DNA of 64,000 nt from the IMG/VR virus record IMGVR_UViG_3300047319_001872, positions 186,001 to 250,000 of that record; one strand, given 5' to 3'. The notes beneath the pieces were generated by a model that ran no database searches, was not told the origin of the DNA, and saw nothing but the letters and a program-made list of their open reading frames with translations. The translations under genes were made by a program, and so were the position numbers. Of this stretch, positions 30,921 to 57,787 are shown piece after piece; the first letter of the stretch is position 1; each line of letters begins with the position of its first letter.

Positions 30921-32006
30921 TTAATCCAGCGTAAAGGGAGTAGTCGGTGCCGTAAAGGCACTCGTGTAACGGGCGACATTGGAAACGCGCACTTCGTCCA
31001 TTTTACCGCCTGCCAAACCCAGGTTCAAACCATTGGTCCAGTTACCCACACACAGGGCGTTGGTATTTTGACCGAACGGCAGACTAGAGGTCGCGGTAGC
31101 GAGTGATACGCCATTTAACCACAAGGTGACCGTGGTGCCGTGCTTGGTGATCGCCACGTGATAACGGGTACCAGCCACCACATTAGACGTCACCTGGATA
31201 ATCGGTGAATTGGTGCTACCCAATGAAACGTAGAACTGACCGTTGTAGTGGTCGATATACGAACCCGTGCCCTTGGAGAAAACGACTTGAGGCGTAGCCG
31301 TGCTGGCCAGTGCCAGGAAGAACTCAATCGTGAAATCTCCCGTCAACTCCAGCTCAGGCGCATCGGGCGTCGTAACATAACTCAGGGCGTCATTTGAGGT
31401 GTACGAAGAAGTTCCGATCAACGGGCTGCTGGTGGTCAGCTGTGCCGAGCCGCCTGGCGTCATCGGGTGACCCGCTGCATCCGTAAAGACCGTGCTGCCG
31501 TTGCTGCCCTCAAAATGCATCAAGAGCACGGTCTTAGGTGGTTGCCAAGCGACGGTAATATCCGTCGAACCGTCCTCGTAGATCAACGAACCGCTCGCCT
31601 GCAAGGTGACAGTTTGGTTGCCTGCTGTGCCTTGTGGAGTAAAGCTCGGTGCTGAAATTTCTGAAGGAATGAAACCAAAATACTGACTCACAGCTGCCAG
31701 CGTGGCGGCCTTACTCGTACCCAACTGCACCGGTACAGGACCTGCAGGGCTGGCAGCCTCAGCAGCGAGTGTCAGCCGTTTATAGGTGACATCGACGCTG
31801 CCTGTAAAATTCGCGTAACTGCCCTGAGGGCCAGTGCCCGTCAGGGTGACCTTAGTATCAGCCCCATTCGGGAAACTACCGGTCGTCACGGCGCTTACTG
31901 TCACTTCGTTAGGAAGGTTCGGTGCTTGCGCATTGGAGGCATCAATCAGCGCAAGCAGATTCTGTACTGCGCTTTTTGTGGGGTCGATTTTCATTCGGGT
32001 CGCCAA
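30921..32006 (-). CDS. Tail fibre/tip paralog (YxR-type domain) + C-terminal LamG/ConA-like domain
   Basis: NLLALIDASN...TYKRLTL; VLLMHFEGSNGST...GDFTIEF...MDEVRVSNVARYT. Confidence 0.8.
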   Translation of the reverse strand: MATRMKIDPTKSAVQNLLALIDASNAQAPNLPNEVTVSAVTTGSFPNGADTKVTLTGTGPQGSYANFTGSVDVTYKRLTLAAEAASPAGPVPVQLGTSKAATLAAVSQYFGFIPSEISAPSFTPQGTAGNQTVTLQASGSLIYEDGSTDITVAWQPPKTVLLMHFEGSNGSTVFTDAAGHPMTPGGSAQLTTSSPLIGTSSYTSNDALSYVTTPDAPELELTGDFTIEFFLALASTATPQVVFSKGTGSYIDHYNGQFYVSLGSTNSPIIQVTSNVVAGTRYHVAITKHGTTVTLWLNGVSLATATSSLPFGQNTNALCVGNWTNGLNLGLAGGKMDEVRVSNVARYTSAFTAPTTPFTLD

Positions 32007-32092
32007 AATAAGGAAAGGTCATAAAATGAACCTGTAGAAAATGACGGCATAAAGGCAGAGCCGAAGCCCCACCCCTACGAGCACTGAAGTGC

Positions 32093-32635
32093 TTAGCTTG
32101 CGGCGTCGAAGCCCGAGAGGTCCGTGACCGTAACGGCCGAGGACAGCGCGACTTGCGGAGCCTGCCAGGTCATGGCGATCGCTTGCAGCGAACCGTCCAC
32201 GTACAGCAGCGAACCCGCATTAGCCACCAGATCGAGCGTGGCTTGATTGCCGCTCTGTGCGCCCGAAAGCGGTGTACCCGGAGCCGCCGGATCTTCGAGA
32301 TGCAGTTCCGACTCCACGAGACCGAGCTGAGCAGCCAGCGCCGTCACGAGCGCAGCCGCCGTGGTACCGGTGGTCGCGGTGTAGCTATCGACCGGGCTGA
32401 GCACCGAGTCGTTCAGACCCCGGCGGGTGTAGTTGACCGAGACCGCACCTGTGTAGCCCTGGCCGCCAACGGCCGTCAGTGCTACCGTGGTGTTACGGCC
32501 GTCGCCCGTATCGGATTTGACGCTGGGTGCACCTGCAGTCACTTGCGCGTTCGTGATCGTCTGGCCGGTATTAGCAGCATTGACGAGCGCGAGCAGGTTA
32601 TCCAACGCCGACAAGCTGGTGTTGATTTTTGCCAT
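32093..32635 (-). CDS. Tail fibre/tip paralog, single domain
   Basis: NLLALVNAAN...NYTRRGL; closest to the N-terminus of 30921. Confidence 0.8.
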   Translation of the reverse strand: MAKINTSLSALDNLLALVNAANTGQTITNAQVTAGAPSVKSDTGDGRNTTVALTAVGGQGYTGAVSVNYTRRGLNDSVLSPVDSYTATTGTTAAALVTALAAQLGLVESELHLEDPAAPGTPLSGAQSGNQATLDLVANAGSLLYVDGSLQAIAMTWQAPQVALSSAVTVTDLSGFDAAS

Positions 32636-32694
32636 TTCCGTTCCTTAAAGGAGAAGTGATCTACTGCACTGCGGGGCCCACATAAGAAGGACCC

Positions 32695-32726
32695 CGCATA
32701 GGATGCAAGTATTTTTTTACTGCTTA
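32695..32726 (-). promoter_or_regulatory. Candidate late promoter TAAGCAGTAAA-N9-GCATCCTATGCG
   Basis: TATG core as in phiKZ late promoters; both blocks repeated at 48830-48859. Confidence 0.55.
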
Positions 32727-34271
32727 ATCTACCACAAATGGAGCAGCAGGTGGGATAAAAGTCGTCGTGTAGCGAGCCATGTTACTCAGGCGCAACTCAT
32801 CGATGCGGCCATTAAACAGCATGGCTGTACTACCGTTGAGGAATTGACCGATCCACAGCGGGTAGGTGTTGTTACCAAATGTTTGAGTACTGGTAACGGT
32901 TTGTACCAACACACCATCGACGAAACATTTCCAACTGTTGCCAGCGCGTACAAAGGCAAAATGCTGCCACGTACCCACTTTGGTACTGCTTGTATCAGGC
33001 GTACCCACGATGACACTACCGTCGGTCCCGAGGATGCGAACCAGGCCACTAGTGGACTGGATATACTGGTAACCTGATTGGGCGCTCGTGCCCTTGGACA
33101 AAATCATGCCGTTTTGAGTGACGTTGTTGTGCCAAGCCCAAAACTCAATCGTCAGATCACCCGTAAAATGCAAATCGGGCGCGTCACTCACAGCAAGATA
33201 TCCGGCACCCGATGGGAAGTAACCGGCACCAAATTTACCTCCAGCACCAGCTACTGCTGCACCATTGTTGGTAACGGTATGGCCGAGCACATCCGCGTAG
33301 GCCGAGGTGCCTGCATTGTCAAAATGCATCAGCAACTTCGTATTGGCTGCGGGACCGACGCCGCTTGCATTAGCAAAGCCAGGCAGATTCACTGTCGTCA
33401 CTGCTGTCGACAACACCACGGAATTCATCAGGTACACATTCGTGCCCGGCGCAAATACGTAGCTGTTCGGATCGACCACCAGCTGCAACTTTGTCGCGTT
33501 CGCTGCAACCGGACCATCCACCACATCCGTCGGATCAAGCGTCAAGCCGTATTGCGTGTTGATCTGAGGGATCAGCGCGCGAATGGTCGTAGCCGAACTA
33601 ATCGTGCCGAGCTTCCAGGTGTTATTGGTGCCACCTAGAAACGCGTTCGCAATGTCCGTGCGATTGTAATAGAGCTTGTACGTGCCTGAGTACTGCTGCA
33701 GCAACGTGCCGATGGGCGCCACCGTCACGTAAGTGTTACAGTTGATCTGTGAACTATCTGCAACGGGCGCGCTCACCGATAACTGTGACTGGGAGATGGT
33801 CTGCTTCGCGTCAGCTTGAATCAATGCCCACAAACCCGCCAAACCTCCTGTCTTAATCTGGAACTGTTTCTTCTGCATGACGAATGCAGAGACTTGACGC
33901 AACTGGCCTTGGGTCGATGACTTCTGCATCGCAAAGGCCGACACCTGACGCAGCGAGCCACTACTGGATAGCTTGGTCCACGTCACTGCGGGCATTGCCC
34001 GGAACTTTGCGCCGATGGCGTCCTGCGTCCATTGCAAGGCCATCACGCGCCGGATCGACATCGTGGGGTTGTCCTGCGACCACTGCAGTGCGGTCACCTT
34101 ACGCAACGTGACAGGCGTGGGTGAGCTGAACCACTGCACTGCCTGCATTTGGCGGAAATACGCGTTGATGTTTTGCGTCGTCCACACGACAGGGGCGGCT
34201 TGACGAACCTGGGCACTACTGCTCGTTCCTTGCCACACCAGTGGGGCGAAGTAGCGAATTGTTGTCGTCAT
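32724..34271 (-). CDS. Tail fibre protein: 8x17-aa repeat + YxR-type domain + LamG
   Basis: Periodic phi-R-x-phi-x-A/P-phi-x-W units; YYNRTDI; LLMHFD...IDELRLSNMARYT. Confidence 0.8.
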   Translation of the reverse strand: MTTTIRYFAPLVWQGTSSSAQVRQAAPVVWTTQNINAYFRQMQAVQWFSSPTPVTLRKVTALQWSQDNPTMSIRRVMALQWTQDAIGAKFRAMPAVTWTKLSSSGSLRQVSAFAMQKSSTQGQLRQVSAFVMQKKQFQIKTGGLAGLWALIQADAKQTISQSQLSVSAPVADSSQINCNTYVTVAPIGTLLQQYSGTYKLYYNRTDIANAFLGGTNNTWKLGTISSATTIRALIPQINTQYGLTLDPTDVVDGPVAANATKLQLVVDPNSYVFAPGTNVYLMNSVVLSTAVTTVNLPGFANASGVGPAANTKLLMHFDNAGTSAYADVLGHTVTNNGAAVAGAGGKFGAGYFPSGAGYLAVSDAPDLHFTGDLTIEFWAWHNNVTQNGMILSKGTSAQSGYQYIQSTSGLVRILGTDGSVIVGTPDTSSTKVGTWQHFAFVRAGNSWKCFVDGVLVQTVTSTQTFGNNTYPLWIGQFLNGSTAMLFNGRIDELRLSNMARYTTTFIPPAAPFVVD

Positions 34272-34281
34272 TCACTCCTCC

Positions 34282-35355
34282 TTAGTTAGTGGGTGTCAGT
34301 ACGAACTGAGTCTGGTTAATCTTCGCGCCTGTCCAGTTTGAACCATCCGGCGCTTTCGTCTGCCAAGGCAACTTTTGATTCAGTACCAGTCCATTGCTAT
34401 TGGCAAACTGGCCAAGCGGTGAAACGTTACTGGAAGCATCCGCAAAGCTCGCTGCAATCTTGGCGGGACCAGCCCCACTCGGTTGAAACGACAGTGTGGG
34501 TTGAACAGCCAGGACTTTCTGACTACTGTCATTAACGGTGACGCCCATCGTCACTGCCAGGGACTGGTTATCTGCCGGAGCCTGCGCATAGGGGCTAATG
34601 ACGGGCGGGTTTTGGTTAGCGGTATTGAGCACCGTCACCAGATCTGCTGCGCCGTTAGGTACCCATTCCGAGCCCGACGCGGCCGCCGTGCGCGACGCTT
34701 TGGCGCGAATCGGACCCAGTCGACCCGGCGTCGATGCATCCACGTCGAGAAAATAGAAGTCGCGATAGCCGCGTGCGTAATTCGCGCTCCCGGTGGACGC
34801 GCCTCCAAAGGTAATGTAGCCCGTGCTGTTAAAGACAGCGGACGTCACCGTACCGGAATTGATCAAAACGCCGTTGCCATACACCTGGAACGTCAGTGCA
34901 CTACGATCGATAAAGACCTCAATGTAGATTTCACCACCCACACCCACCATCCCTGCTGCGATCAGATGTGACTCATCGAGCAGCGAAGTCCAGCTACCGA
35001 AGGATGTGCTGTTGGTCACGATGACCACATGGGGTGCACCGAGCGTGTTATTCACGATCAGCTTCGTGCGGAAACCAAACCAATACTGCGTTGCCACGCT
35101 CCAGTCCTGCACAGCTGCGGTGGGTACAAAGAGCGCCCCGCATTGACCGGACGAATTAGCGGCGTTCGACAAGAAGCCATCGGCCGTCACGGAGAAGATG
35201 TTGCTGGGGGTAGTGTTATTAACGTAGGTGAGCGGCTGACCGACATTGCCAGTATACTGGTTGTAGATCGTGTTGCCGTTATAACTCGATCCCGCGGCAC
35301 TCAGTGTCATCCCCACTGGCGCATTCTCAAAATGCCACAAATCGTGAAGGGCCAT
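34282..35355 (-). CDS. Virion fibre/receptor-binding-like paralog, family B copy 1
   Basis: MALHDLWHFENAP...YRDFYFLDVD...RLGPI...APDGSNWT. Confidence 0.75.
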   Translation of the reverse strand: MALHDLWHFENAPVGMTLSAAGSSYNGNTIYNQYTGNVGQPLTYVNNTTPSNIFSVTADGFLSNAANSSGQCGALFVPTAAVQDWSVATQYWFGFRTKLIVNNTLGAPHVVIVTNSTSFGSWTSLLDESHLIAAGMVGVGGEIYIEVFIDRSALTFQVYGNGVLINSGTVTSAVFNSTGYITFGGASTGSANYARGYRDFYFLDVDASTPGRLGPIRAKASRTAAASGSEWVPNGAADLVTVLNTANQNPPVISPYAQAPADNQSLAVTMGVTVNDSSQKVLAVQPTLSFQPSGAGPAKIAASFADASSNVSPLGQFANSNGLVLNQKLPWQTKAPDGSNWTGAKINQTQFVLTPTN

Positions 35356-35370
35356 GTTCGTTACTCTCTG

Positions 35371-36420
35371 TTACGGGGTGAGGGTCGCGACCATCGCCGC
35401 CAACGACTGGGGTGTGAAGGGCGTGCCATCCGGTGCTTTCTCGAGCACAAACGCGTTCTGATTCCAGTACATCTGGGCGCCGTTCGGATAGGTAATTTGC
35501 TTACCATTCACGGACTGGCCGTTATACGAAACACTCGCCTGTGGGGCGAAGATGTAACTCGCCGTGCGCTGGCCCGACACGTCCGCTTTCGCAGCGAGAA
35601 TACTCTCGCCTGCAATCAGGCCCGCATTCGAGAGCTTGAACTGCAACGGGTCCATGGTCGCGGGCTCTGTCAGCAGCGGTGCATTTTGAGACCCGGCCGT
35701 TGTGCCAAGCGGCGTCGACAGGTCGACCAACGCCGTGCTGCTATCGCTGGAGGTCCAGTTCGGTGCCGTCACGCTGGCCAAAGCGGCAGGCGTAACATCC
35801 ACCGGACCGAGGCGATTACATTGCGTGGCATCCTGGGTGTCATCGATGAAGTACACATCGCGCAGGTACCAGGTGTAAGTAGCTGAAGGATTGTTACAGC
35901 CCCATACCAACCAGGCGTTGCCGTCCGCCGACACGAACGCATTGAAGTCAAAGAACGTGCTCGACACTTGCACCCCGTCGATCCACACCACGATCTGGGT
36001 GTTGGCACGATCAATCATTACCTCGATGTACTGGGGGGTGTTTAGTGCCAGCTGCGTATTCAGCACCAGGGTCTGCTTAGTGCCTGCTGTGTTCTGTAAA
36101 TACAGCACCGGGACGGACAGGCTGTTATTATTGACCTGAAACCGCATCCCGATAAAGCTGCGCGGCGCGCTAAAAACGCTGAGGTTCTGATAGGGGATGG
36201 AAATGAGCGGATTGTAGGTCCCGTAATTCGTGTTCGGATACGGGTTAGTGGCGCCAATGCACGTCAGCCAGTTCGCCCAGCTGCCGGTCCCTTTGATCAC
36301 GGTTCCGTAGTTAGTGTAATAGTTGGTGACCACAATATCGCCGCGCAAGTAGTTAAGCGCCGTGGCACCTGCCGTGTAAGGAGGGATATTGTCGAAGCCC
36401 CAAAAATCTCGGATAGCCAT
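35371..36420 (-). CDS. Family B paralog copy 2
   Basis: MAIRDFWGFDNIP...LRDVYFIDD...RLGPV...APDGTPFT. Confidence 0.75.
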   Translation of the reverse strand: MAIRDFWGFDNIPPYTAGATALNYLRGDIVVTNYYTNYGTVIKGTGSWANWLTCIGATNPYPNTNYGTYNPLISIPYQNLSVFSAPRSFIGMRFQVNNNSLSVPVLYLQNTAGTKQTLVLNTQLALNTPQYIEVMIDRANTQIVVWIDGVQVSSTFFDFNAFVSADGNAWLVWGCNNPSATYTWYLRDVYFIDDTQDATQCNRLGPVDVTPAALASVTAPNWTSSDSSTALVDLSTPLGTTAGSQNAPLLTEPATMDPLQFKLSNAGLIAGESILAAKADVSGQRTASYIFAPQASVSYNGQSVNGKQITYPNGAQMYWNQNAFVLEKAPDGTPFTPQSLAAMVATLTP

Positions 36421-36500
36421 CTTTAAACTCTCTTGATGATAACGAACATAAAAACCCCGACACCCTCCCTGAGGAGAGCGTCAGGGCTCTCGTGCCGCTA

Positions 36501-37577
36501 CTAGGTGGTCGACACGGGCTGAACGATCAACTGCGTCGCATTAAAGCGCGCATCACTCCACGCATTGCCACTCGGGTCCGTCGTCTGCACACCCGCCAGA
36601 TCCCGACCGTAATCCATCGTCGTATCGGTGAAACTGTAGTTGGGCAGATTCTTCGTGGCTGAACCGTTATTCAACTGTGCCGTGACTTGCGCCGCTGCCG
36701 TCACGCTTGCCGCCATCTTGTACTGCACCGCAATCATGCCTGCGCCTGCAGGTGCGGTCGACTGATACGTCACCGTAATCGGGTCGTTGGTCGGAGCATT
36801 CGACTGCGTCGGCGCGGGCGACGGTGTAGCGCTGTAGCCGGTCTGGAAATCCAGCAAGGCGGACTTGCCGTCGCTTGACGAATAGTTTGGGGCGGTCACG
36901 GCCGCGTACTGTGCGACCGCGGACTGAATAGGACCCAGTCGCGTATTGGGTAGCGTTGCGTCGCCGTCGATGAAGTAGAAGTCCTGCAGCGAGAAGTTGC
37001 AGGAGTTCGTTGTCACTGCGTTCGAGCCAAATACCAGATACGTAAAACCAGTCGCCAGCACGGCCTTATCGATGATCTTCAACCCATCGACCCAGGCCGT
37101 GTACTGACTGTTGGCGATGTCGAGCATCACCTCCACGTACTGCGTCACATTCACGGTCCGACTGAGCTGCGTCTCGTTCACCAGCGAGGTCGGTGCAACC
37201 GTCGCCGAAGAAGCCGTCCCAAATACCGATGAGGTGCCAGGTGCGGGAATCGCTGAGCTCCAGGTGCGAAAACCAATGTAAGCTTTGGTCGCGCCACTTT
37301 GCAACAAAGGAATATCGGCAAGCGCCACGACCAGTGCCTGAGCCTGCGAGGTGCTATTGCCAAATCCCAGTCCGCCACCACGATAAGTGCCACCCGACGC
37401 ACCTGCCACGACGCTATTGATCACGCAGTTTGACGCACCAGCGCGCAGAATCAGCGTACCCGGATTACCGGTGAGCTGATTATACGCATTGTTCGGTGTG
37501 TACGCAGCGATCGCAGTCAGCGGGATGTTGGATGCGTTGGCAATGTGATCGTACGTCCACAAGGCTCGCAAAGTCAT
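36501..37577 (-). CDS. Family B paralog copy 3
   Basis: MTLRALWTYDH...LQDFYFIDGD...RLGPI...DPSGNAWS. Confidence 0.75.
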   Translation of the reverse strand: MTLRALWTYDHIANASNIPLTAIAAYTPNNAYNQLTGNPGTLILRAGASNCVINSVVAGASGGTYRGGGLGFGNSTSQAQALVVALADIPLLQSGATKAYIGFRTWSSAIPAPGTSSVFGTASSATVAPTSLVNETQLSRTVNVTQYVEVMLDIANSQYTAWVDGLKIIDKAVLATGFTYLVFGSNAVTTNSCNFSLQDFYFIDGDATLPNTRLGPIQSAVAQYAAVTAPNYSSSDGKSALLDFQTGYSATPSPAPTQSNAPTNDPITVTYQSTAPAGAGMIAVQYKMAASVTAAAQVTAQLNNGSATKNLPNYSFTDTTMDYGRDLAGVQTTDPSGNAWSDARFNATQLIVQPVSTT

Positions 37578-37658
37578 GTTAATCTCTCTTCAAAGAAACT
37601 GGGTCTGGAAGCCATTTAGTAAAAAATAACTTCCAGAATACACATCATTAGCCGCCTT

Positions 37659-39332
37659 TTAGTCGATCACAAAGGGCGCGGAAGGCGGGGTGAAGTTCGC
37701 GGTGTAGCGTGCGATGTTACTCACCCGCAGTTCATCGATGTAGCCTGGGAACTGCGAAGCCGTATTGTACTGGTTGCCACCGATCGTCCACGTACTGCCC
37801 GACAGACCAAAGGTCAGTGCCGACGTCAGAGTGCCTTGGGCCACCCCGCCGATGTAGCCTGTATAGACACCATTGGCGTACACCACAGCACAATGCTGCC
37901 ATTTGTTGAGCGTAAAGGCGGCGGCCGGGGCCAGTGTCTTCCAACCCGAGCCGTCAGTCAGGTAAATCCCTAATCCCTTATCAGACTGCTGACCAATTGA
38001 GGTTTGGCCTGTAGTGGTATTAGCAGTCTTCGAACTGAGAATGGTCGTGTCGCCCAGTGCTGCGGTCCGATAAAGCCAGAACTCAACCGTCATCGCGCTA
38101 CCGAGCACCATCGTCGCATCGGAAGCAACCGAGAGGTTACCCGTGGTGCTCGAGTTATACGACTTGCTCCCCATGGCCACCTGACCCGTGGTGAGTACAC
38201 CATTGCCGTTCGATGTCCAGGTCCGACCTGTGTCATCGACGAAACTTTCCATGTGCATCAAGACCACGGTGTTGAGGGTCTTCGGCGTGAGGATTGCGCT
38301 CGACGCATTGATCTTTGCCGGTGTCCACAACCCACCGTCAGGCGCCTTACGTTGCACACCCCACTTTTGGTTGAAGAGGTTCGTGTTGGGTGGCACGACA
38401 ATTTTACCCGCAGCCAGCGTGTTCGATGCCTGGCTAAAGGATACATCGATCGAATTCGACGCTGAATCACCGATCAGGGTGAGCTGTGGCTGCACGGCGA
38501 TGATGGGCACATTCGCTGCCACGCTGGTGCTTAGGTTCGCAGTCACAGGCTGGTTGTTCGCCGGAGCTGACGCACTCGGCGTGGTGACCGGCGGGTTCTG
38601 CAAGGCAGTTGTCAATGCCGTGGGCAAATCCGCTGCACTATTGAGTGTCCAGTCCGTTCCAGCGATATTCGAAAGACCCGCGTGCGATGAACGAATCGGA
38701 CCCAGTCGTACCGTATCGGTGCTATCAAAATCCAAAAAGTAGAAATCCCGATAACCCCGCGCAGCATTGGCCGTTCCTACTGTACTACCGGTTCCAAACA
38801 CACCGTAACCCGTCGCCGGAAAGGCACTGGCGGAGAATGTCGTCGAACGCACCAGATTACCATTCACATACAGCCAGTACGTGAGCGCCACCGAATCAAC
38901 GATAAGCTCCACATAGAGCTCGGTATTAGCTGGAGCGACCAGATCCGCTTCCGAGATCCAGATCAGCAACGTCGCGGTCGCAAAGCCTGCGGTGGTGATG
39001 AACACTCGGCCCGGCGTGGAGCCGGTCACTGCTTGACTGGATTTGGTTCGAAAACCGATACCCCACTTGGTGGCACCGCTCATGTTCAGCGCTTGGGCGA
39101 GCTTAAACCAAATCATGCTGCCGTTGCCGCTCGAGTTATTCGTCGAGGTAGCAAAGCCATTTGCGTCCACCGCCAGCGTACTGCCACTGTAAGTGTAGGT
39201 GCAGCCTGGGTTTCCGGTGTAGTAGTTGTAAACGTTGCTCGGCCCCGTGGTCGAGGTGAGGTCAGTCGTGCCGGTGAGCAAACTCGTACCCACTGGCGCA
39301 TTATCAAACGACCACAAGTCATGGATTGCCAT
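37659..39332 (-). CDS. Family B paralog copy 4 with appended C-terminal LamG
   Basis: MAIHDLWSFDNAP...RLGPI...APDGGLWT, then VVLMHM...IDELRVSNIARYT. Confidence 0.78.
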   Translation of the reverse strand: MAIHDLWSFDNAPVGTSLLTGTTDLTSTTGPSNVYNYYTGNPGCTYTYSGSTLAVDANGFATSTNNSSGNGSMIWFKLAQALNMSGATKWGIGFRTKSSQAVTGSTPGRVFITTAGFATATLLIWISEADLVAPANTELYVELIVDSVALTYWLYVNGNLVRSTTFSASAFPATGYGVFGTGSTVGTANAARGYRDFYFLDFDSTDTVRLGPIRSSHAGLSNIAGTDWTLNSAADLPTALTTALQNPPVTTPSASAPANNQPVTANLSTSVAANVPIIAVQPQLTLIGDSASNSIDVSFSQASNTLAAGKIVVPPNTNLFNQKWGVQRKAPDGGLWTPAKINASSAILTPKTLNTVVLMHMESFVDDTGRTWTSNGNGVLTTGQVAMGSKSYNSSTTGNLSVASDATMVLGSAMTVEFWLYRTAALGDTTILSSKTANTTTGQTSIGQQSDKGLGIYLTDGSGWKTLAPAAAFTLNKWQHCAVVYANGVYTGYIGGVAQGTLTSALTFGLSGSTWTIGGNQYNTASQFPGYIDELRVSNIARYTANFTPPSAPFVID

Positions 39333-39419
39333 AACCTACTCCAATGTAATTCGATGACATAAGTGGACACCCAATCTCCTCTCCTCACCTAGGAGAAGAG
39401 ACCGAATGCCCTCTCATGT

Positions 39420-41144
39420 TTAGTTGATGTTTGCCGCCGTGGTCGACTGCGGCTGCAACACCAGGTTGGTCGCCGAAATGGTACTGCTAGTCCAGGCGTT
39501 GCCGTTCGGATCGGTCGTCTGAATGCCCGCCAGATCTCGTGTGTACTGCGCCGCGGTATCGCGAAACTGATACGTCGCCAGTGCCTTGTTGGTTGCGCCT
39601 TCTTGGAGCGAAGCCAACAGGTTGATCGCAAACGGTACCTGCGCGGCAAGCTTATACTGCATCGCGAGAACCTTCTGTCCGGCCGGAACGCTCGGAGCGA
39701 AGTTCACCGTCATGGGTTGATTATCCGCACCGTTTTGGACGAACGGCGTAATGGCCGCTGTGGCCGCGTAAGCCGTCTGCAAAGCCGACACTGTGTTACC
39801 ACTCGAATCCGCCACGTAGGTCGAACCGTTAAGTACGCTCGCGTCCAGGTGCATCAGGAGCATGGTGTTGGCGTCTGTCGTGAACGGCCCAGTCGGCGGA
39901 GTAAAGCCCGTGGTGTAACGCGCCATATTCGAGACCCGGAACTCGTCAATATAACCTTGCCAGGGACTGGTTAGATTGTTATTATTGCCGAGAATCAGGT
40001 TCGACGTATTGTTACCGAACGTCGCGTTGCCCGCCACGTTACCCAGCGCCACCCCGTTCTGGTAAATGGTCCAGGTGCCTTGGTAGCGGACCAGCGCCAG
40101 GTGGAACCACTGGTTGACCACCGGGTTACCCGTCACACTGAGCGCGGGCGTGCCCGAAGTCTGGTCGGTAAGGAGCTGCCATACGCCCGAGACATACTGC
40201 AAACGGGCCCACGGTGAAGCGCCTGAGTCCTTACACATAAAACCTACCGACTGCCCAGCATTGGTGCTCATGGCCCAGCACTCGTACGTCATGTCACCCG
40301 TTACCGTGCGGTACTGCACGGCATCAGGAATCACCACTGCGCCGCTGGCGACACCATTCGTCGTAAATGAAGCGGGGCCAAACTTCGCCTGAGCATTCGA
40401 AATCGCCGATGCACCATTCAGCGTACCGATAAAGTTTCCGTAGTTCGGCGCTTGCACGCCACTGACAAGCGGGATAAGCGGGGTGCTCGTGATCGGACCG
40501 AGCCGACCATTGGGCTTGGTGGCGTCCACATCCAAGAAATAGAAGTCCCGGAAGGCCTGTCCGAACGAGCCACTAAAGGGTTGACCACTGTAGACGAAGT
40601 GAGTGAAACCAGTTGGCAACGTCCCACTGCTAGTTGCCACGCCATTGACGTAAGTCTGATACGTATGGTTAGCGTTATCCAGGAAGACTTCAACGTACTG
40701 CGCACCTGCTACGCCTGCTGTCACGCGATTAAGCTGGGTTTCGTTGATAAGTGAAACGACGTTGGCACCGCCCCCGCCCAACACACCCGCTGCGGATGAC
40801 GGCAACACACCGAAACAGTTACAACTGCCAGGTGCAAGACCAGTGGCGTAGGTACGGAAGCCCAACCAGGCCTGCGTAGCGCCGCCCTGAAACAGACCAG
40901 AGTCCGCCAGCGAAATCACATAACCCGCATACAGCGTAGAGTTACTGACCCCGAGACTCAGCCAGCCCGGTGAAGGCGTGGTGCTGATGTTAGCGCCATT
41001 GGAGCTGTTGCCGGTCATCATCGCGCCAGGCGCGCCGTACTGGGTCTGAAAGCTATTCGGTGTAGCATAGGTAGTGCCGACCGTCAGCGCAAACGCAGCC
41101 GTGAGCTGAACATGGTCAAACGAGATTAATGCGCGGAGCGTCAT
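39420..41144 (-). CDS. Family B paralog copy 5 with an internally inserted LamG
   Basis: MTLRALISFDH...RLGPI...[LamG]...DPNGNAWT; likely start 41144. Confidence 0.78.
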   Translation of the reverse strand: MTLRALISFDHVQLTAAFALTVGTTYATPNSFQTQYGAPGAMMTGNSSNGANISTTPSPGWLSLGVSNSTLYAGYVISLADSGLFQGGATQAWLGFRTYATGLAPGSCNCFGVLPSSAAGVLGGGGANVVSLINETQLNRVTAGVAGAQYVEVFLDNANHTYQTYVNGVATSSGTLPTGFTHFVYSGQPFSGSFGQAFRDFYFLDVDATKPNGRLGPITSTPLIPLVSGVQAPNYGNFIGTLNGASAISNAQAKFGPASFTTNGVASGAVVIPDAVQYRTVTGDMTYECWAMSTNAGQSVGFMCKDSGASPWARLQYVSGVWQLLTDQTSGTPALSVTGNPVVNQWFHLALVRYQGTWTIYQNGVALGNVAGNATFGNNTSNLILGNNNNLTSPWQGYIDEFRVSNMARYTTGFTPPTGPFTTDANTMLLMHLDASVLNGSTYVADSSGNTVSALQTAYAATAAITPFVQNGADNQPMTVNFAPSVPAGQKVLAMQYKLAAQVPFAINLLASLQEGATNKALATYQFRDTAAQYTRDLAGIQTTDPNGNAWTSSTISATNLVLQPQSTTAANIN

Positions 41145-41213
41145 GATTCCCTCTGTCAAAAAGCTTAATGCATATTCCAGGAAAGCCTCTGGGAGGCCCT
41201 CCCAGAATCGGTA

Positions 41214-41558
41214 TTACGCTTGCCGAGGTGTTTCGTTGTACTGCAAAACCAGAAGATTGTGTGGACCATTGGCCCACGGCAACTCCAGCACCAGCGCGTA
41301 CTTGAACAAAGCGTTCGAGGGCAGGTGCGTGTGGTTCACGCCGTTAAACCTCACCTCGGCTCCAGCCAACGTATAAGGCTCTTCTTCTTTGTCGGTCCAT
41401 TGGGCACGATGCTCGCCCTTGTCATGGGTGCTCAGAGATGCCGCCAGGAGCGTCACATCCGTCGCACTCAGTGTACCGAGTGGTACTTTTGCCAGCACAT
41501 CGCCATCGCTGGAAAAGTCCGTGAAGAAGAGATAGTTCGGCCAAAAAGTCGTTGCCAT
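41214..41558 (-). CDS. Stand-alone C-terminal-type domain of the fibre family
   Basis: YLFFTDFS...FKYALVLEL...LQYN resembles the C-termini of 42085-47349. Confidence 0.65.
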   Translation of the reverse strand: MATTFWPNYLFFTDFSSDGDVLAKVPLGTLSATDVTLLAASLSTHDKGEHRAQWTDKEEEPYTLAGAEVRFNGVNHTHLPSNALFKYALVLELPWANGPHNLLVLQYNETPRQA

Positions 41559-41571
41559 CTCACATCCTTTC

Positions 41572-42072
41572 TTAGAAGCCCGTCAGCACGTTCGAGTAGA
41601 ACAGATTACTGATGTTAGGCAAGGGGGCCAACACGCAGTCAAACGAACCGGTGTACCCGTAGGAGGTCGACAGTGCGGTCAACGTCACATGGGTGTTACC
41701 ATCACCGCCGGTAGTCGTCGTCGCGTCAGCGATGTCGTTCATCGTCAGCGTAAAACCATACTGGTCACGAATCGTGTTCAGTACGGTCGAGACGTCATTA
41801 CTGGGCGCTGCCACCAGCAGCACCGGACTGAAGTTCGCCCAGGCACCCAGATCGAGTCGATCGTAGTACAGCGTCATCTCACCCCGAAGCGGCGCTCCGG
41901 CGTTCATCGACACGTGGACCTTGGTGTTCTTGCCATTAGCCACTCCGGCCTGCTCAGCAGTCGTGGTCGGTTTTAACGCCACCACGGTAAACTGGCTGGA
42001 CGTCACCGTCACGCCGGAGGCTGCACTGATTAACGAGGCGAGGTCGTCGCTCGAATTTTGATACAAACTCAC
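41572..42072 (-). CDS. Tail fibre/tip paralog, single domain
   Basis: LYYDRLDL; SYGYTGS. Confidence 0.8.
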   Translation of the reverse strand: MSLYQNSSDDLASLISAASGVTVTSSQFTVVALKPTTTAEQAGVANGKNTKVHVSMNAGAPLRGEMTLYYDRLDLGAWANFSPVLLVAAPSNDVSTVLNTIRDQYGFTLTMNDIADATTTTGGDGNTHVTLTALSTSYGYTGSFDCVLAPLPNISNLFYSNVLTGF

Positions 42073-42084
42073 ATCGACCTCCCT

Positions 42085-42972
42085 TTAATTAAAGTGCAGA
42101 TAGAACGCGCCCTGAAACCAGGACCCGGCTACCGCCGTGATCGTTACCACATACGCAAACTTGTTGCTATTCGCGCCCGGCACTGAAGCCGAAGGCAACG
42201 TGTAGCGCGACACCAGCAGATTACCCAAACCACCGGACGTGGTGGTGGAATCCTGGCCGCTCAGATTCAGACTCGGTAGGCTCTGTTGCAGAAAAGCCAA
42301 AATGCCTGCCAACGCACTGCCTGCCAGGAGCCAGTTTGAAGGGGTCGGTGTGGAGGATGAGCTCAGTGCTAAAAGCTGCGTACGAATCTTCGAACAATCG
42401 AGACCGTAGCTCAACACATCAGCCTGGGGTTTACGGCCACCGCCAAAGGTGTTCCCGCCCGGATACAGCTTACCCGTCAGTACCGGGGTCGTGATGACCT
42501 GGCTCATGTACGGCGCACCTTGCGTCCACTTGAAAGTAAATGACCCTTCGTAGCACAAGGACGTCGACAGCATCGTAACGGTGTACGAGTTGCCCGAGGT
42601 AAAATTCGAGGCAGTGAAATCGCTCGTCGTCAGCTCGGTGCCGTACTTGGCATTGAAACACTGACAGAACTGCGCGGGTGTCATGCTCGTTGAGCCGATG
42701 TAGTTATCGAGCGTCAACGTCATGCTGCGGAAAAGATTAGCCAGGTTAATGCGCCGGTAATACACCGTTTGCTTACCGATATACTGACCGACATTACCGG
42801 GCAAGGACAGGAGCACCAGGCTCGTGTCCTGAATCTGGCCGGAGCCAGGTGTTACGACAGTTGGCACCAACGAGCGTAGCATCGCGGTCGTCAGAGGCAC
42901 CTTCAGACCGGGATTCGACGTGTTAATCAACCCGAGCAAGGTGTTCAACTGCGTGTCAAGAAATGGGTACAT
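42085..42972 (-). CDS. Tail fibre/tip paralog, two-domain
   Basis: LLGLINTSN...YYRRINL...FYLHFN. Confidence 0.8.
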   Translation of the reverse strand: MYPFLDTQLNTLLGLINTSNPGLKVPLTTAMLRSLVPTVVTPGSGQIQDTSLVLLSLPGNVGQYIGKQTVYYRRINLANLFRSMTLTLDNYIGSTSMTPAQFCQCFNAKYGTELTTSDFTASNFTSGNSYTVTMLSTSLCYEGSFTFKWTQGAPYMSQVITTPVLTGKLYPGGNTFGGGRKPQADVLSYGLDCSKIRTQLLALSSSSTPTPSNWLLAGSALAGILAFLQQSLPSLNLSGQDSTTTSGGLGNLLVSRYTLPSASVPGANSNKFAYVVTITAVAGSWFQGAFYLHFN

Positions 42973-42988
42973 TAAACACCTCGTTTCG

Positions 42989-43009
42989 GGAGCGGGTCAA
43001 CCCCGCTCC
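42989..43009. terminator. Intergenic hairpin followed by GTATG on the plus strand
   Basis: GGAGCGGG-TCAAC-CCCGCTCC. Confidence 0.5.
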
Positions 43010-43022
43010 GTATGCTCTCGAC

Positions 43023-43916
43023 TTAGAAGTTGTTCGGGTCGAACGGATCGTTGTAGTGCAGGTACAGCGTGCCCGAAGGCGTCGTCTGATTCGCTGCCAA
43101 CTGGATCGCCATCACGTACTTGTAGGCCGGGTTGGTCGGGTTATTCACCGCATCATTCAGGCCGTTCGAGACGATGGTGGCCCCCGTCAAGTTCCAGGTC
43201 GTGTTAGCGCCCGTGTCCACCCACAGCGACTTACCTGCGCCCACATCCACGGCTTGAATGGCCGCCAACACGGCATCGAGCTGAGTCTGGGTCATCGCGC
43301 CGGGCGCATACGACAGGAACGTCGACTGCCAGGACGTGAAGTCGTACGGATACAGATACGCCGGGCCGTACACTGCCGTGGCGGGCGGGGCTGACGCATC
43401 GGCCACCGGATAGTTAATACCCGGCAAGTTCGTGGTCAAAGCAGCCGCATCAATCGGCACGCCGCCCGGCACCACATTGAGCATCACGCTACCTTGCCAG
43501 CCGAGCGAGTTCGGGTCCGCCGAGAGCTGCACTTGACCCGTACCATCGCCATTGAGCGTAATCGGCAGGTTCTGCAAGTCCCCTTGCACGAACTGGATGC
43601 CCAGGTAGTACGCGAGCTGGGGCAGGATGTCCCAGGTTGTTTGCGGATTGCTCACGGCCAGATCCGTGACGCCGTGCAGATTGGCCAGCTGGGCCAAATC
43701 CAGGCGATTATAGAGAATCACCTGCGAGCCTTGATAATTCGCTGAAGCCGCCGTCACTTTCACCGCAGTGTTGCGATCGCTCGACAAACCTTGCCAGGTC
43801 CCCGATACCACTTTCGGATTCGAGAACGACAGATCGGACGCCGTAAACGTCGTCGCATTGGCGGCGTTGATCGCGTTCAGCAAATCAGTCAAGGATGGGA
43901 GTTGAAAAGTCGACAT
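43023..43916 (-). CDS. Tail fibre/tip paralog, two-domain
   Basis: LLNAINAAN...LYNRLDL...SLGWQGS...LYLHYN. Confidence 0.8.
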   Translation of the reverse strand: MSTFQLPSLTDLLNAINAANATTFTASDLSFSNPKVVSGTWQGLSSDRNTAVKVTAASANYQGSQVILYNRLDLAQLANLHGVTDLAVSNPQTTWDILPQLAYYLGIQFVQGDLQNLPITLNGDGTGQVQLSADPNSLGWQGSVMLNVVPGGVPIDAAALTTNLPGINYPVADASAPPATAVYGPAYLYPYDFTSWQSTFLSYAPGAMTQTQLDAVLAAIQAVDVGAGKSLWVDTGANTTWNLTGATIVSNGLNDAVNNPTNPAYKYVMAIQLAANQTTPSGTLYLHYNDPFDPNNF

Positions 43917-43925
43917 ATCTCACCC

Positions 43926-44897
43926 TTAAACGTTGTAGTGCATGATGATGCGGCCTGCGCCCCACGAAGCACCGGCAGGCAGATCCAGATACAGCGCACG
44001 ATTGAAGTACTTGCTGTCCGCTTCCGGCAACGCCGCACTCGGCAGCGTCACGTTCGTGAACTTAATCCCGTACAGACTGTATGGGGTCGAAGCCGGATTG
44101 GTCAGGTTGTACTGTGTAGTAATCGCGGCGTTGATCGAAGCGAGCAGCGAGTTATGTACCGTCGCACCTGTGCCAGTTTGGGTGCCCAGGCCGTAGCTGG
44201 TCAAGAAAACAAGGACTTGAGCCAAAGTTTGGCTCGACGCCACACCTGCCTGGTTAAGCGCATTGGTCCAGTCGATCGAGTAGAAGTCCAGATCCGGCAC
44301 GTAGACGCCGTTATCCACCACATTGCGACCCCCAGGGAACACGCGGGCATTTTCCAGACTCGTCACCGAGATCATCGACGCGATGTCCTGCGGGGCCTGC
44401 ACCCAGTAAAGGGTAAAGCTACCGATAAACCCAGGGCTACCGGTCGCGGCTGCGACAGTCGCCGCACTGTTACGCGTGCCTGCTACCAGACCAATGGCTG
44501 GCACGGCGTTATTGTTACCGACAGGGAGATTGGCATCGACGATGTCGGCGGTAGTCAGCGTCAGACCGTACTTTGCATTGATCGACGGCAACAGATCCGA
44601 GATCTTAAACGGCGAACCAGCATTGGGCGAGTACTTGTAAATGACGATCGGCAAATTGCGGAACAAAATACCGAAGTCCAACCGACGATACAGCAGCGTG
44701 GTGTTACCCACGTATTTCGTCCCAGCCTGCGCGGTGACCTTGATCGACGTGTTCTGAATGTTGCCCCCCGTCGGCGTCACCGCAGTGGGCGTACCGTACA
44801 GGGCATTCGTCGTGGTCAGCGGCACAGGCAGAGAGGGATTTGCTTGGTTGATCAAATCAACCAGCATCTGCATGGACTGCTTGGGATAAAGAGACAT
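43926..44897 (-). CDS. Tail fibre/tip paralog, two-domain
   Basis: LVDLINQAN...LYRRLDF...IMHYNV. Confidence 0.8.
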   Translation of the reverse strand: MSLYPKQSMQMLVDLINQANPSLPVPLTTTNALYGTPTAVTPTGGNIQNTSIKVTAQAGTKYVGNTTLLYRRLDFGILFRNLPIVIYKYSPNAGSPFKISDLLPSINAKYGLTLTTADIVDANLPVGNNNAVPAIGLVAGTRNSAATVAAATGSPGFIGSFTLYWVQAPQDIASMISVTSLENARVFPGGRNVVDNGVYVPDLDFYSIDWTNALNQAGVASSQTLAQVLVFLTSYGLGTQTGTGATVHNSLLASINAAITTQYNLTNPASTPYSLYGIKFTNVTLPSAALPEADSKYFNRALYLDLPAGASWGAGRIIMHYNV

Positions 44898-44907
44898 GGT
44901 TCAAGCC

Positions 44908-45783
44908 CTAACGATTTTCGAGGACGTTGTAGTGAAAGTACATGGCGCTGCCGTAGAAGACACCAGCCCAAATCGTACCGAGAATCACTACCCGATCAAA
45001 ATTCTTGTTACTGTCGGCGATCTGTGAGGTCGCGTAATCTCCCGCGCCCGTGTAGGCGTAGCGCGCATCCGGAAAGTAAGGAATCCCCACTTTCGCACAA
45101 GCTGCACTGAGCGTCGCGTAGTCCGCAATGCCGTTGTAGCCCACGAACTGGTTAAGAGCGTAGTACTTGATCGCCAGCGCATCACGCATTGACGTGAAGT
45201 CGTAGTTCCACAGATAATCCCGACCATTGAGTCGATACGGGACATGGTTCACCACAGCGGCGCTATAGTCGTCAAACATCGTGTTCAACCGATTACTCGC
45301 GATCACCACATTCAGGTGCGGCTTATCGTGGGTAATCGTGATGTCGACTGAGCCTTTCCACCCGAGCGAGTCATCGGCCGCTACCAGCGTCACCGTACTC
45401 GAACCGAGGAGGGGTGGCGTGGTGATGTCCTGCGGAACAAAATCTTCCTCTTGCAGGAACGTCCCCAAGGACGCATTCATCAACGTCGCGATGCTCGCCA
45501 GCGTGAAGTTATCCAGCGAGGCCAGCGAGACCCGGCCTGCCAGATTGGAGAGGGGGACGCGGGTGTACTGAATCACCGCGTCACCATAGTAGCCTCGACC
45601 TGGCACCCCTGTGACGTCCACCGTGGTATCGTAGCCCACCGCGCCGTCAGGCGCAGCTTGCGGCGTACCGAAGATCAGGTTCTTATCCGAGAAGATCGGA
45701 TTCGGGGTGAACGTCTCATTGAGCAGGATAATCAGCTGCTCTCCGGAGAGAGTCGTCGGCTGTGACGTAATACCTGTCATCAC
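44908..45783 (-). CDS. Tail fibre/tip paralog, two-domain
   Basis: QYTRVPL...SLGWKGS...MYFHYN. Confidence 0.8.
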   Translation of the reverse strand: MMTGITSQPTTLSGEQLIILLNETFTPNPIFSDKNLIFGTPQAAPDGAVGYDTTVDVTGVPGRGYYGDAVIQYTRVPLSNLAGRVSLASLDNFTLASIATLMNASLGTFLQEEDFVPQDITTPPLLGSSTVTLVAADDSLGWKGSVDITITHDKPHLNVVIASNRLNTMFDDYSAAVVNHVPYRLNGRDYLWNYDFTSMRDALAIKYYALNQFVGYNGIADYATLSAACAKVGIPYFPDARYAYTGAGDYATSQIADSNKNFDRVVILGTIWAGVFYGSAMYFHYNVLENR

Positions 45784-45795
45784 TCTCTCCTTGGA

Positions 45796-47340: not shown

Positions 47341-47348
47341 GACTAATC

Positions 47349-48179: not shown

Positions 48180-48200
48180 ACGTACCCCTTAACGAATAAA

Positions 48201-48222
48201 GAGGGGACCCGAAGGTCCCCTC
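48201..48222 (-). terminator. UUCG hairpin terminator
   Basis: GAGGGGACC-CGAA-GGTCCCCTC. Confidence 0.8.
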
Positions 48223-48251
48223 TCGTTTTAGGTCTGAACCAACAAAACGAC

Positions 48252-48782: not shown

Positions 48783-48829
48783 TTTCGATACCTTCTGGAA
48801 GGTTAATGGGGTCGAAGAAAAAACACATT

Positions 48830-48859
48830 CGCATAGGATGCGCCAACTTTTACTGCTTA
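48830..48859 (-). promoter_or_regulatory. Candidate late promoter TAAGCAGTAAA-N7-GCATCCTATGCG
   Basis: Both blocks identical to 32695-32726. Confidence 0.55.
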
Positions 48860-56320: not shown

Positions 56321-56336
56321 GTTGACGTGCTCCTTG

Positions 56337-57701: not shown

Positions 57702-57731
57702 GTTCTCTGTATCCTTGTCTTAGCAGCAATA

Positions 57732-57767
57732 ACCCCCTCCCAGGCCCCTGAGGACCCAGGAGGGGGT
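57732..57767 (-). terminator. Intergenic hairpin
   Basis: ACCCCCTCC...GGAGGGGGT 9-bp stem. Confidence 0.6.
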
Positions 57768-57787
57768 AATCACACGCAAGCTACGTG

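What the first reader, a model, noticed from the sequence alone, without database searches (positions are those of the whole stretch)
33852..34259. Eight precise 17-aa repeats at the N-terminus of a fibre protein: possible multi-docking scaffold
Seen: IRYFAPLVWQGTSSSAQ / VRQAAPVVWTTQNINAY / FRQMQAVQWFSSPTPVT / LRKVTALQWSQDNPTMS / IRRVMALQWTQDAIGAK / FRAMPAVTWTKLSSSGS / LRQVSAFAMQKSSTQGQ / LRQVSAFVMQKKQFQIK. The period is exact, with an invariant Arg, an alternating hydrophobic beta-strand ending in W (or M), and a polar spacer. The gene directly follows the five family-B paralogs. Inference: each strand may dock one subunit by beta-augmentation, giving a branched multi-receptor fibre, or the repeats form a beta-helix. 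The counts (8 repeats, 5 paralogs) do not match exactly.
Basis: partly seen in the sequence, partly recalled or inferred. Interest (0 to 1): 0.62.

Follow-up and report, generated by a model that had tools for sequence, protein, structure and literature searches.

The report
Basic 17-residue repeat array on phage fibre protein
A giant phiKZ-like phage has one host-recognition fibre protein whose front end is eight exact, strongly conserved, highly basic 17-residue repeats found in no known family; they most likely fasten or organise other fibre parts, but the partner is unidentified.

Summary
Window 33852-34259 (minus strand) encodes residues 5-140 of a 515-aa protein (gene 32724-34271). These residues are eight gap-free 17-aa units with the motif hydrophobic-R-x-hydrophobic-x-A/P-hydrophobic-x-W plus an 8-residue polar spacer. 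The period-17 signal has z=16 against shuffles.

The rest of the protein is a DUF7941 N-terminal domain with its linker, then a LamG lectin domain. DUF7941 is the chimallivirus "fibre cloud" polymerising module. The 313-kb genome is phiKZ-like, and this is the only one of its 13 DUF7941 paralogs with an N-terminal extension.

- **Distribution:** the array has no Pfam, PHROG or PDB match. It occurs only in a small clade around Burkholderia phage FLC9.
- **Constraint:** unit length is always 17. There are eight units in seven orthologs and nine in one. dN/dS is 0.08 for the strands and 0.14 for the spacers.
- **Charge:** the array is very basic (net +14, pI about 12, no Glu), while its neighbours are acidic.
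- **Family B:** these proteins are lectin-fold homologs of phage Chi gp32-34. They number 5 or 6 while the repeat number stays at 8, so there is no covariation.
- **Prediction:** structure and complex predictions were uninformative.

My best reading, at modest confidence, is a multivalent strand array that attaches to acidic, repeated virion subunits. A self-folding beta-solenoid remains a serious rival.

The parts
32724..34271 (-). Whole gene, 515 aa (P0001): 8x17-aa array, then DUF7941 N-terminal domain with linker, then a LamG lectin domain
   Evidence: ORF list and translation; Pfam DUF7941 74.9 bits and Laminin_G_3 65.6 bits, both over the cut-offs
34275..34283 (-). Shine-Dalgarno AAGGAGGAG, overlapping the TAA stop (34282-34284) of the upstream family-B gene; ATG at 34269-34271
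   Evidence: Sequence read
33852..34259 (-). Repeat array, residues 5-140: eight 17-aa units of 51 nt each. Unit 1 is 34209-34259, unit 2 is 34158-34208, unit 3 is 34107-34157, unit 4 is 34056-34106, unit 5 is 34005-34055, unit 6 is 33954-34004, unit 7 is 33903-33953, unit 8 is 33852-33902
   Evidence: z=16; 8 HMM domains; invariant R2, A/P/G at position 6, W/L/M at position 9. Net charge +14, pI 11.9, no Glu. dN/dS 0.08 for strands and 0.14 for spacers
33339..33833 (-). DUF7941 N-terminal globular domain plus linker (residues 147-311)
   Evidence: Pfam PF25613 profile positions 12-183 of 276, E=9e-21; aligns with the 11 other paralogs in the window
33375..33419 (-). Conserved DUF7941 linker motif (residues 285-299, ending NLPGF). 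In the published model this segment docks on the next protomer's N-terminal domain
   Evidence: Alignment A3; docking model from the Goslar preprint
32772..33212 (-). LamG / concanavalin-A-like lectin domain (residues 354-500)
   Evidence: Pfam PF13385, E=7e-18; PHROG matches to virion and baseplate proteins
34282..41159 (-). Five 'family-B' paralogs: 34282-35355, 35371-36420, 36501-37577, 37659-39332 and 39420-41159. The last two carry an added LamG domain. The last gene's true start is probably the ATG at 41144
   Evidence: phrog_2448; alignment with phage Chi gp32/33/34; AF2 pLDDT 80 with legume-lectin/ConA-like matches
30921..32635 (-). Two downstream DUF7941 genes: 32093-32635 (180 aa, N-terminal domain plus linker, pI 4.1) and 30921-32006 (DUF7941 plus LamG)
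   Evidence: this synteny is conserved in all relatives
41214..49396 (-). Upstream block of nine DUF7941 paralogs (41572-49396) plus a stand-alone DUF7941 C-terminal-domain gene (41214-41558)
   Evidence: hhalign probability 85%, E=6.5e-6 for the 114-aa ORF

Best explanation
The stretch encodes a multivalent attachment module at the N-terminus of one special protomer of the chimallivirus DUF7941 host-recognition fibres. The protein has three parts. The first is eight evenly spaced, basic strand motifs (hydrophobic-R-x-hydrophobic-x-A/P-hydrophobic-x-W), each followed by an 8-residue polar spacer. The second is the DUF7941 N-terminal domain and linker, which join head-to-tail filaments on the peripheral baseplate. 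The third is a LamG lectin head.

I propose that the array has little or no stable fold on its own. Each unit would lie as an added beta-strand on an acidic subunit that is itself repeated in the virion. The invariant Arg would pair with an acidic residue and the Trp would sit in a hydrophobic pocket. This would anchor, bundle or seed fibres. Candidate partners are successive DUF7941 protomers of a filament, the band of gp139-like dimers, or the lectin-like family-B proteins.

Shown: the repeat, its strict pitch, purifying selection, charge, clade restriction, domain context and phage type. Inferred: that it binds at all, the beta-augmentation mode, and the partner.
For: - **Unique among paralogs:** P0001 is the only one of 13 DUF7941 paralogs with an N-terminal extension, which fits a special role such as anchor, initiator or branch point.
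- **Family context:** DUF7941 proteins are described as head-to-tail filament formers that extend from the peripheral baseplate. In that model an extended linker of one protomer docks on the next protomer's N-terminal domain, so assembly by extended peptide is already how this family works. In phiKZ one DUF7941 protein ends the band of five gp139 dimers (papers read). This genome has the gp139, gp140 and gp131 homologs and PF12699 proteins.
- **Charge:** the array has net charge +11 to +16 and pI about 12, with no Glu, in every ortholog. The candidate partners are acidic. The adjacent 180-aa DUF7941 protein has pI 4.1, family B has pI 4.4-5.6 and the gp139-like protein has pI 4.6.
- **Selection:** the strands evolve as slowly as the folded domain (dN/dS 0.08 against 0.09). 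The spacers are looser but still constrained (0.14) (identities).
- **Strict pitch:** unit length is exactly 17 in all 65 units even though the units are only 12-65% identical to each other. This suggests a fixed pitch imposed by a lattice or by a fold.
- **No predicted fold:** AlphaFold2 gives pLDDT 22-29 and no secondary structure over the array.
- **No known relatives:** there is no Pfam or PDB match even at E<=10.
Against: - There is no direct evidence of binding to anything. The one complex prediction gave no verdict, which counts neither way.
- Repeat number does not track the number of family-B or DUF7941 genes.
- The array is 33% hydrophobic and sits slightly on the folded side of the charge-hydropathy boundary (0.473 against 0.450), so it is not a typical disordered region.
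- The spacers are under purifying selection, and the strict unit length fits a solenoid equally well.
- The AF2 failure is weak evidence, because the alignment held only 8 sequences and the neighbouring DUF7941 domain was also poorly modelled.
- Most virion proteins are acidic, so charge complementarity does not single out a partner.
Confidence: 0.35

Rival explanations
1. The eight units fold by themselves into a compact repeat structure, with one rung or strand per 17 residues (a beta-solenoid or a stacked-hairpin rod about 4 nm long). The Arg and Trp side chains would line up as ladders on one face. The rod would act as a rigid spacer or as a binding face of its own.
For: - Unit length is strictly constant.
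- Positions 1, 4, 7 and 9 are conserved hydrophobic, and position 6 is a conserved small residue (A/P/G), as at a turn or corner.
- The hydrophobic fraction is 33% and hydropathy lies on the folded side of the boundary.
- The spacers are under purifying selection.
- Each unit has its own conserved spacer across orthologs, as in an asymmetric fold.
- Units 7-8 differ (W replaced by M/L), as a cap might.
Against: - AlphaFold2 predicts no secondary structure (pLDDT 22-29), and the second predictor also left the array's own fold uncertain.
- The second half of each unit is polar and cannot supply a second hydrophobic strand.
- Pro plus Gly is only 7%.
- Eight stacked Arg side chains and a net charge of +14 would be costly without a counter-ion or ligand.
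- No known repeat family matches.
Confidence: 0.3
2. The array is a polycationic Arg/Trp adhesive tail that sticks non-specifically to anionic host surfaces (LPS, capsule or exopolysaccharide). It would raise fibre avidity alongside the LamG lectin head.
For: - The array has pI about 12, six Trp and no Glu.
- The protein belongs to a host-recognition fibre family and carries a lectin domain.
- The neighbouring genes are all lectin-fold proteins.
Against: Non-specific adhesion would tolerate insertions and deletions, yet all 65 units are exactly 17 residues. Ala/Pro at position 6 and the hydrophobic positions are conserved as strongly as a folded core. The array also sits next to the polymerisation domain, not at the distal end.
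Confidence: 0.15
3. One reading: each repeat docks one family-B paralog by beta-augmentation, giving a branched multi-receptor fibre.
For: - The gene immediately follows, and is translationally coupled to, the last family-B gene.
- Among the jumbo phages searched, family B and the array occur together only in the FLC9-like clade.
- The family-B paralogs share a conserved N-terminal strand and are acidic.
- The spacers are specific to each repeat yet conserved across orthologs.
Against: There are always 8 repeats, whether a genome has 5 or 6 family-B genes. Family-B homologs (gp32-34) exist in Chi-like phages without any such array. Independent docking sites would not need an exact 17-residue pitch. 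No profile similarity or other link between the two was found.
Confidence: 0.1
4. The array is the shaft of a homotrimeric fibre, like the triple beta-spiral of adenovirus or reovirus fibres.
For: It is a short periodic beta-type repeat at the N-terminus of a fibre protein, and its period is close to the 15-17 residues of those shafts (my own knowledge of those families).
Against: - There is no Gly/Pro turn position and no second hydrophobic strand in the unit.
- A trimer would concentrate about +42 charge.
- DUF7941 and LamG modules are described as protomers of head-to-tail filaments, not trimers.
- Homotrimer prediction was not run.
Confidence: 0.05

Closest known systems
Burkholderia phage FLC9 gp310 (BDD79829.1, annotated hypothetical protein) and metagenomic orthologs P0002-P0008
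   Same: They share the 8x17-aa array with no gaps, the DUF7941 domain and linker, and the gene order (family-B genes upstream, a 180-aa DUF7941 gene downstream). Identity to FLC9 is 66% over residues 1-331.
   Different: The C-terminal modules are swapped just after the NLPGF linker. FLC9 gp310 and P0007 are about 1078 aa, with a Gly-rich region and two LamG-type domains. P0008 has nine units.
DUF7941 (PF25613) 'fibre cloud' proteins of chimalliviruses: Goslar gp22/gp23 and gp86/gp92/gp161, phiKZ gp126/gp127/gp143
   Same: They share the N-terminal globular domain plus linker. Some are followed by carbohydrate-binding domains. They occur as many paralogs per genome in phiKZ-like jumbo phages.
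   Different: In the described members the DUF7941 module is N-terminal. None is reported with a repeat array in front of it, and here 12 of the 13 paralogs also lack one.
Tandem short-motif organisers of filaments (Spire/Cobl tandem WH2 nucleators; nebulin on actin), as a functional analogy only
   Same: These are arrays of short units of similar length at a fixed pitch, each unit proposed to bind one subunit of a polymer (my own knowledge; inference).
   Different: There is no sequence or fold relationship. Those motifs are helical and eukaryotic. Binding is not shown here.
Branched receptor-binding complexes of phages (CBA120 tailspikes, G7C gp63.1/gp66, PhiK64-1/RaK2 hyperbranched fibres)
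   Same: In both, one protein is thought to carry docking sites for several paralogous receptor-binding proteins encoded next to it (my own knowledge).
   Different: Those systems dock through folded adaptor domains on trimeric proteins, not through 17-residue strands. No covariation between docking sites and paralogs is seen here.
Short beta-repeat folds: choline-binding repeats (about 20 aa), curli CsgA (about 22 aa), the adenovirus fibre triple beta-spiral (about 15 aa)
   Same: The period is similar, with conserved aromatic and hydrophobic positions.
   Different: No Pfam or PDB match even at E<=10. The unit has only one hydrophobic strand, is very basic and has few Gly/Asn turn residues.

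Membership tests
DUF7941 (PF25613) chimallivirus fibre proteins | Match to the Pfam model above its gathering score | tested here: met
   74.9 bits against a cut-off of 27; residues 147-311 match profile positions 12-183 of 276; recovered again in the whole-genome scan
DUF7941 (PF25613) chimallivirus fibre proteins | Encoded by a phiKZ-like (chimallivirus) phage; the family is reported as exclusive to them | tested here: met
   313-kb genome with direct terminal repeats; 5 PF12699 matches, 3 of them over the cut-off; homologs of phiKZ gp139 (E=1e-68), gp140 and gp131/133. Chimallin and PhuZ were not searched for
DUF7941 (PF25613) chimallivirus fibre proteins | Conserved linker after the N-terminal domain, the segment said to dock on the next protomer | tested here: met
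   Residues 285-299 align with the L-x-x-V-I-x-x-x-x-L-x-G motif of the paralogs
DUF7941 (PF25613) chimallivirus fibre proteins | Head-to-tail oligomerisation and presence in the virion | not testable with these tools
   Needs purified protein or virion mass spectrometry. It is known only for Goslar gp22 and from models of phiKZ gp126-gp127
Laminin_G_3 / concanavalin-A-like lectins | Match to PF13385 above its gathering score | tested here: met
   65.6 bits against a cut-off of 27.6, residues 354-500
Any described repeat family (choline-binding, hexapeptide, pentapeptide, RTX, curli and others) | Sequence match of residues 1-146 to a Pfam, PHROG or PDB entry | tested here: not met
   No Pfam family at E<=10; no PHROG covers residues 1-146; no PDB chain matches a profile of 8 orthologs at E<=10
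Triple beta-spiral fibre shaft (adenovirus/reovirus type) | A unit with two hydrophobic strands joined by a conserved Gly/Pro turn; a trimeric protein | tested here: not met
   The position profile shows one hydrophobic strand (positions 1-9) and a polar second half, with no Gly/Pro turn column. Oligomeric state was not tested
Branched multi-receptor-binding-protein adaptor | Number of docking sites tracks the number of docked paralogs; physical binding | tested here: inconclusive
   Counts do not covary: 8 units with 5 or 6 family-B genes and with 13-15 DUF7941 genes. Only eight orthologs are known and the one 9-unit variant is on a truncated contig. Binding was not established

The most novel reading that the evidence does not exclude
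The array is a template that lines up eight DUF7941 protomers (or four to five gp139-like dimers) at a fixed pitch. It would then be a nucleator, ruler or branch point for phage host-recognition filaments, working like tandem WH2 nucleators or nebulin on actin. That would be a new assembly principle for phage fibres, in which one 17-residue strand is given to each subunit.
Probability: 0.15. Interest if true: 0.75.

Novelty: new variant of a known kind. Interest (0 to 1): 0.45.

Why it matters
DUF7941 fibres were proposed only in 2026 as a micron-scale "cloud" that lets chimalliviruses find their hosts. How these filaments are anchored, started, branched or limited in length is unknown. Here one paralog out of 13 carries a conserved, selected, strictly periodic N-terminal array, which makes it a concrete candidate for that organising role. 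A cultivable relative, Burkholderia phage FLC9, carries the same array, so the idea can be tested directly. If the array is instead a new self-folding 17-residue beta-repeat with Arg/Trp ladders, it would be a new small repeat fold.

Tried and rejected
- **DNA level:** Tandem Repeats Finder found no repeat. Megablast of 32000-36000 against phages found nothing.
- **AlphaFold2 of residues 1-320:** with 8 sequences the mean pLDDT was 37 and the array scored 22-29. This is uninformative rather than negative.
- **Complex prediction:** I tested the array against the adjacent family-B protein plus the adjacent 180-aa DUF7941 protein. The outcome was no verdict (ipSAE 0.43, 0.00, 0.00 against a mark of 0.32), and I use it as evidence neither for nor against binding.
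- **ESM Atlas features for residues 1-146:** scores were at most 0.85 with no family, so there is no lead.
- **Whole-library HMMER search with residues 1-146:** only P0001, P0004, P0007 and P0008 are true relatives. P0009, P0010, P0011 and P0013 are unrelated long repeat proteins matched through composition.
- **P0012:** this protein has a 17-aa unit with R at position 2 and W at position 9. It is the only called gene on a 5-kb contig and translates only with TAG read as Gln. I treated it as chance and did not pursue another genetic code.
- **More loci:** IMG/VR gave only genomes already in hand, and the metagenome scan gave none.
- **Profile comparison (hhalign) of the array:** there is no similarity to the DUF7941 paralogs or to family B, so I dropped the idea that the unit is a copied strand of either.
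- **tblastn with the DUF7941 domain alone:** it found only FLC9 and was too insensitive to survey N-terminal extensions elsewhere.
- **Numerology:** I considered matching the 8 units to 5 or 6 family-B genes, to 13-15 DUF7941 genes or to five gp139 dimers. None fits.
- these were not used.

Full report
**Observation.** The + strand of 33852-34259 translates to a sequence full of stops. The repeats are on the minus strand, inside ORF 32724-34271, which encodes 515 aa (P0001). The BLOSUM62 self-score at period 17 is 1.45. The best period in 5000 shuffles averages -0.20 +/- 0.10, so z=16 and no shuffle reached the observed value. Multiples of 17 come next, and the signal ends at residue ~140. An HMM of the unit finds eight domains here and nothing else in the 313,315-bp genome. 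There is no DNA-level tandem repeat. A strong ribosome-binding site, AAGGAGGAG, lies just upstream of the ATG and overlaps the stop codon of the upstream gene.

**The protein.** Pfam places DUF7941 (PF25613) at residues 147-311 and Laminin_G_3 at 354-500, both far above the curated cut-offs. Nothing covers residues 1-146. A profile of the array matches no PDB chain at E<=10.

A 2026 preprint on phage Goslar describes DUF7941 as specific to chimalliviruses. [quoted passage not shown] The result is head-to-tail filaments. Purified gp22 forms filaments, and the authors propose a fibre cloud that starts at the peripheral baseplate and carries carbohydrate-binding heads. The phiKZ structural atlas places one DUF7941 protein, gp127, at the end of a band of five gp139 dimers in each star lobe.

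**The genome.** The window's genome fits this group. It is a complete record of 313 kb with direct terminal repeats. It has five PF12699 (inner-body protein) matches, three of them over the cut-off, and 13 DUF7941 matches. It has clear homologs of phiKZ gp139 (E=1e-68), gp140 and gp131/133. Twelve of the 13 DUF7941 genes lie in the window. In the alignment, all paralogs except P0001 start within about 12 residues of the first helix of the domain, and P0001 keeps the conserved linker motif ending NLPGF. P0001 is therefore an ordinary DUF7941-plus-lectin fibre protomer with an extraordinary front end.

**Distribution and constraint.** The closest named relative is Burkholderia phage FLC9 gp310, annotated as a hypothetical protein (66% identity over residues 1-331). 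The word search and the whole-library HMMER search of 1.84 billion representatives found only a handful of orthologs from contigs of about 310-330 kb. IMG/VR and metagenome scans added nothing.

- **Unit number:** seven orthologs have eight units with no insertion or deletion. P0008 has nine, through duplication of unit 2.
- **Motif:** over 65 units, Arg at position 2 is invariant, position 6 is A/P/G in 64, position 9 is W/L/M, and positions 1, 4 and 7 are hydrophobic.
- **Similarity between units:** units are only 2-11 residues out of 17 identical to each other. Each unit, including parts of its spacer, is conserved across orthologs.
- **Selection:** against the closest genome, where dS is not saturated, dN/dS is 0.08 for the strand halves, 0.14 for the spacers and 0.09 for the DUF7941 domain.
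- **Charge:** net charge is +11 to +16 with pI about 12 and no Glu in any ortholog. The rest of the protein and almost all neighbours are acidic.
- **Composition:** the array is 33% hydrophobic and sits marginally on the folded side of the charge-hydropathy boundary.

**Family B.** The five upstream genes share a core of about 350 aa, and two of them carry an added LamG domain. They align over their full length with gp32, gp33 and gp34 of the flagellotropic siphophage Chi. AlphaFold2 models one of them well (pLDDT 80). Foldseek returns legume-lectin and other concanavalin-A-like jelly rolls, with modest TM scores that reflect the generic fold, in line with the Atlas result. They are therefore probably lectin-type receptor-binding proteins.

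Their number is 5 in the window, L009, L010, L003 and L005, and 6 in FLC9 and L006. All of these genomes have eight repeats. DUF7941 gene counts of 13, 14 and 15 also go with eight repeats. The nine-unit ortholog is on a 6-kb contig, so its gene counts are unknown.

**Mechanism.** Two structure predictors gave no confident fold for the array. The alignment was shallow and the neighbouring real domain was also poorly modelled, so this is only weak evidence against a solenoid. The single complex prediction allowed gave no verdict and is not used. Profile comparison shows that the unit is not a detectable copy of any part of DUF7941 or family B.

What remains is inference from anatomy. The array has a strictly fixed pitch. 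It has an invariant exposed Arg and a conserved Trp, strong positive charge among acidic partners, and strand-like hydrophobic patterning followed by polar spacers. It sits uniquely in front of a domain whose family already assembles through extended peptides docking on globular domains.

I therefore favour a multivalent strand array that attaches to repeated acidic virion subunits, acting as an anchor, bundler or seed for the fibres (confidence 0.35). The exact pitch argues for a periodic partner, or else for a fold, rather than for independent beads on a string. The main rival is a self-contained beta-solenoid or rod with Arg/Trp ladders (0.30).

**Comparison and novelty.** Membership in DUF7941 and LamG is established by the curated models. 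The array itself belongs to no described family. It resembles tandem WH2 or nebulin-type organisers, and branched receptor-binding adaptors, only in the way it might work. I rate it a new variant of a known kind: a DUF7941 fibre protein with a novel, clade-restricted N-terminal repeat module. Interest is moderate. The feature is real, selected and unexplained, and it could be tested in the cultivable phage FLC9. However, its function is inferred, and the family context is now published.

**Limits.** FLC9, Chi and phiKZ proteins from annotated records were used only for alignment and local searches, not for folding.

Noticed in passing
window 41214-41558 (-), with 41572-42072 (-): [quoted passage not shown] It directly follows a 166-aa gene that has only the N-terminal domain and linker. 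This looks like a DUF7941 protein split into two genes, and the arrangement is conserved in relatives as 113-115-aa ORFs.
   Followed up: partly
window 34282-41159 (-); L008 5803-8816 (phage Chi gp32-34): The five 'family-B' paralogs are full-length homologs of the gp32/gp33/gp34 triplet of the flagellotropic siphophage Chi and its relatives. They have a concanavalin-A/legume-lectin-like fold. A tail-tip gene set is thus shared between a 60-kb siphophage and a 313-kb chimallivirus.
   Followed up: partly
L001 10001-13231 (FLC9 gp310); P0007: Orthologs keep residues 1-~305 and then diverge completely after the NLPGF linker. Two of them (1076-1079 aa) carry a Gly-rich region and two LamG-type domains in place of one LamG. 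This is module swapping at the linker.
   Followed up: no
L002 4472-6112 (P0008): This is the only ortholog with nine units, from a duplication of unit 2. The contig is only 6.3 kb, so the gene counts of that phage are unknown.
   Followed up: partly
L007 3124-3696 (P0012): An unrelated 190-aa ORF made of near-identical 17-aa units with R at position 2 and W at position 9 (E=2e-5 to the array). It is the only called gene on a 5-kb ENA contig and translates only with TAG read as Gln. It is probably a chance match amplified by repetition.
   Followed up: partly
window 30921-49396 (-); genome 70058-70489 (+): There are 13 DUF7941 genes in this genome, 14 in the closest relative and 15 in FLC9. 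That compares with 10 reported for Goslar and 3 for phiKZ, so this clade has a large expansion. One isolated copy sits next to the gp131/gp139/gp140 homologs.
   Followed up: partly
window 33852-34259 (-): Within the array, units 1/2, 4/5 and 7/8 (adjacent) and units 3/6 are the most alike (6, 8, 11 and 6 identities out of 17). The period-51 self-score exceeds the period-34 score, which hints at an older three-unit block. Units 7-8 have M/L in place of W.
   Followed up: no
window 39420-41159 (-): The mechanical ORF starts at a TTG (41159). Orthologs and paralogs begin at the MTLRAL motif, so the real start is probably the ATG at 41144.
   Followed up: no
window 54953-60073 (-): Three PF12699 / internal-head-protein paralogs of the phiKZ inner-body type lie at the upstream end of the same minus-strand gene block.
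   Followed up: no
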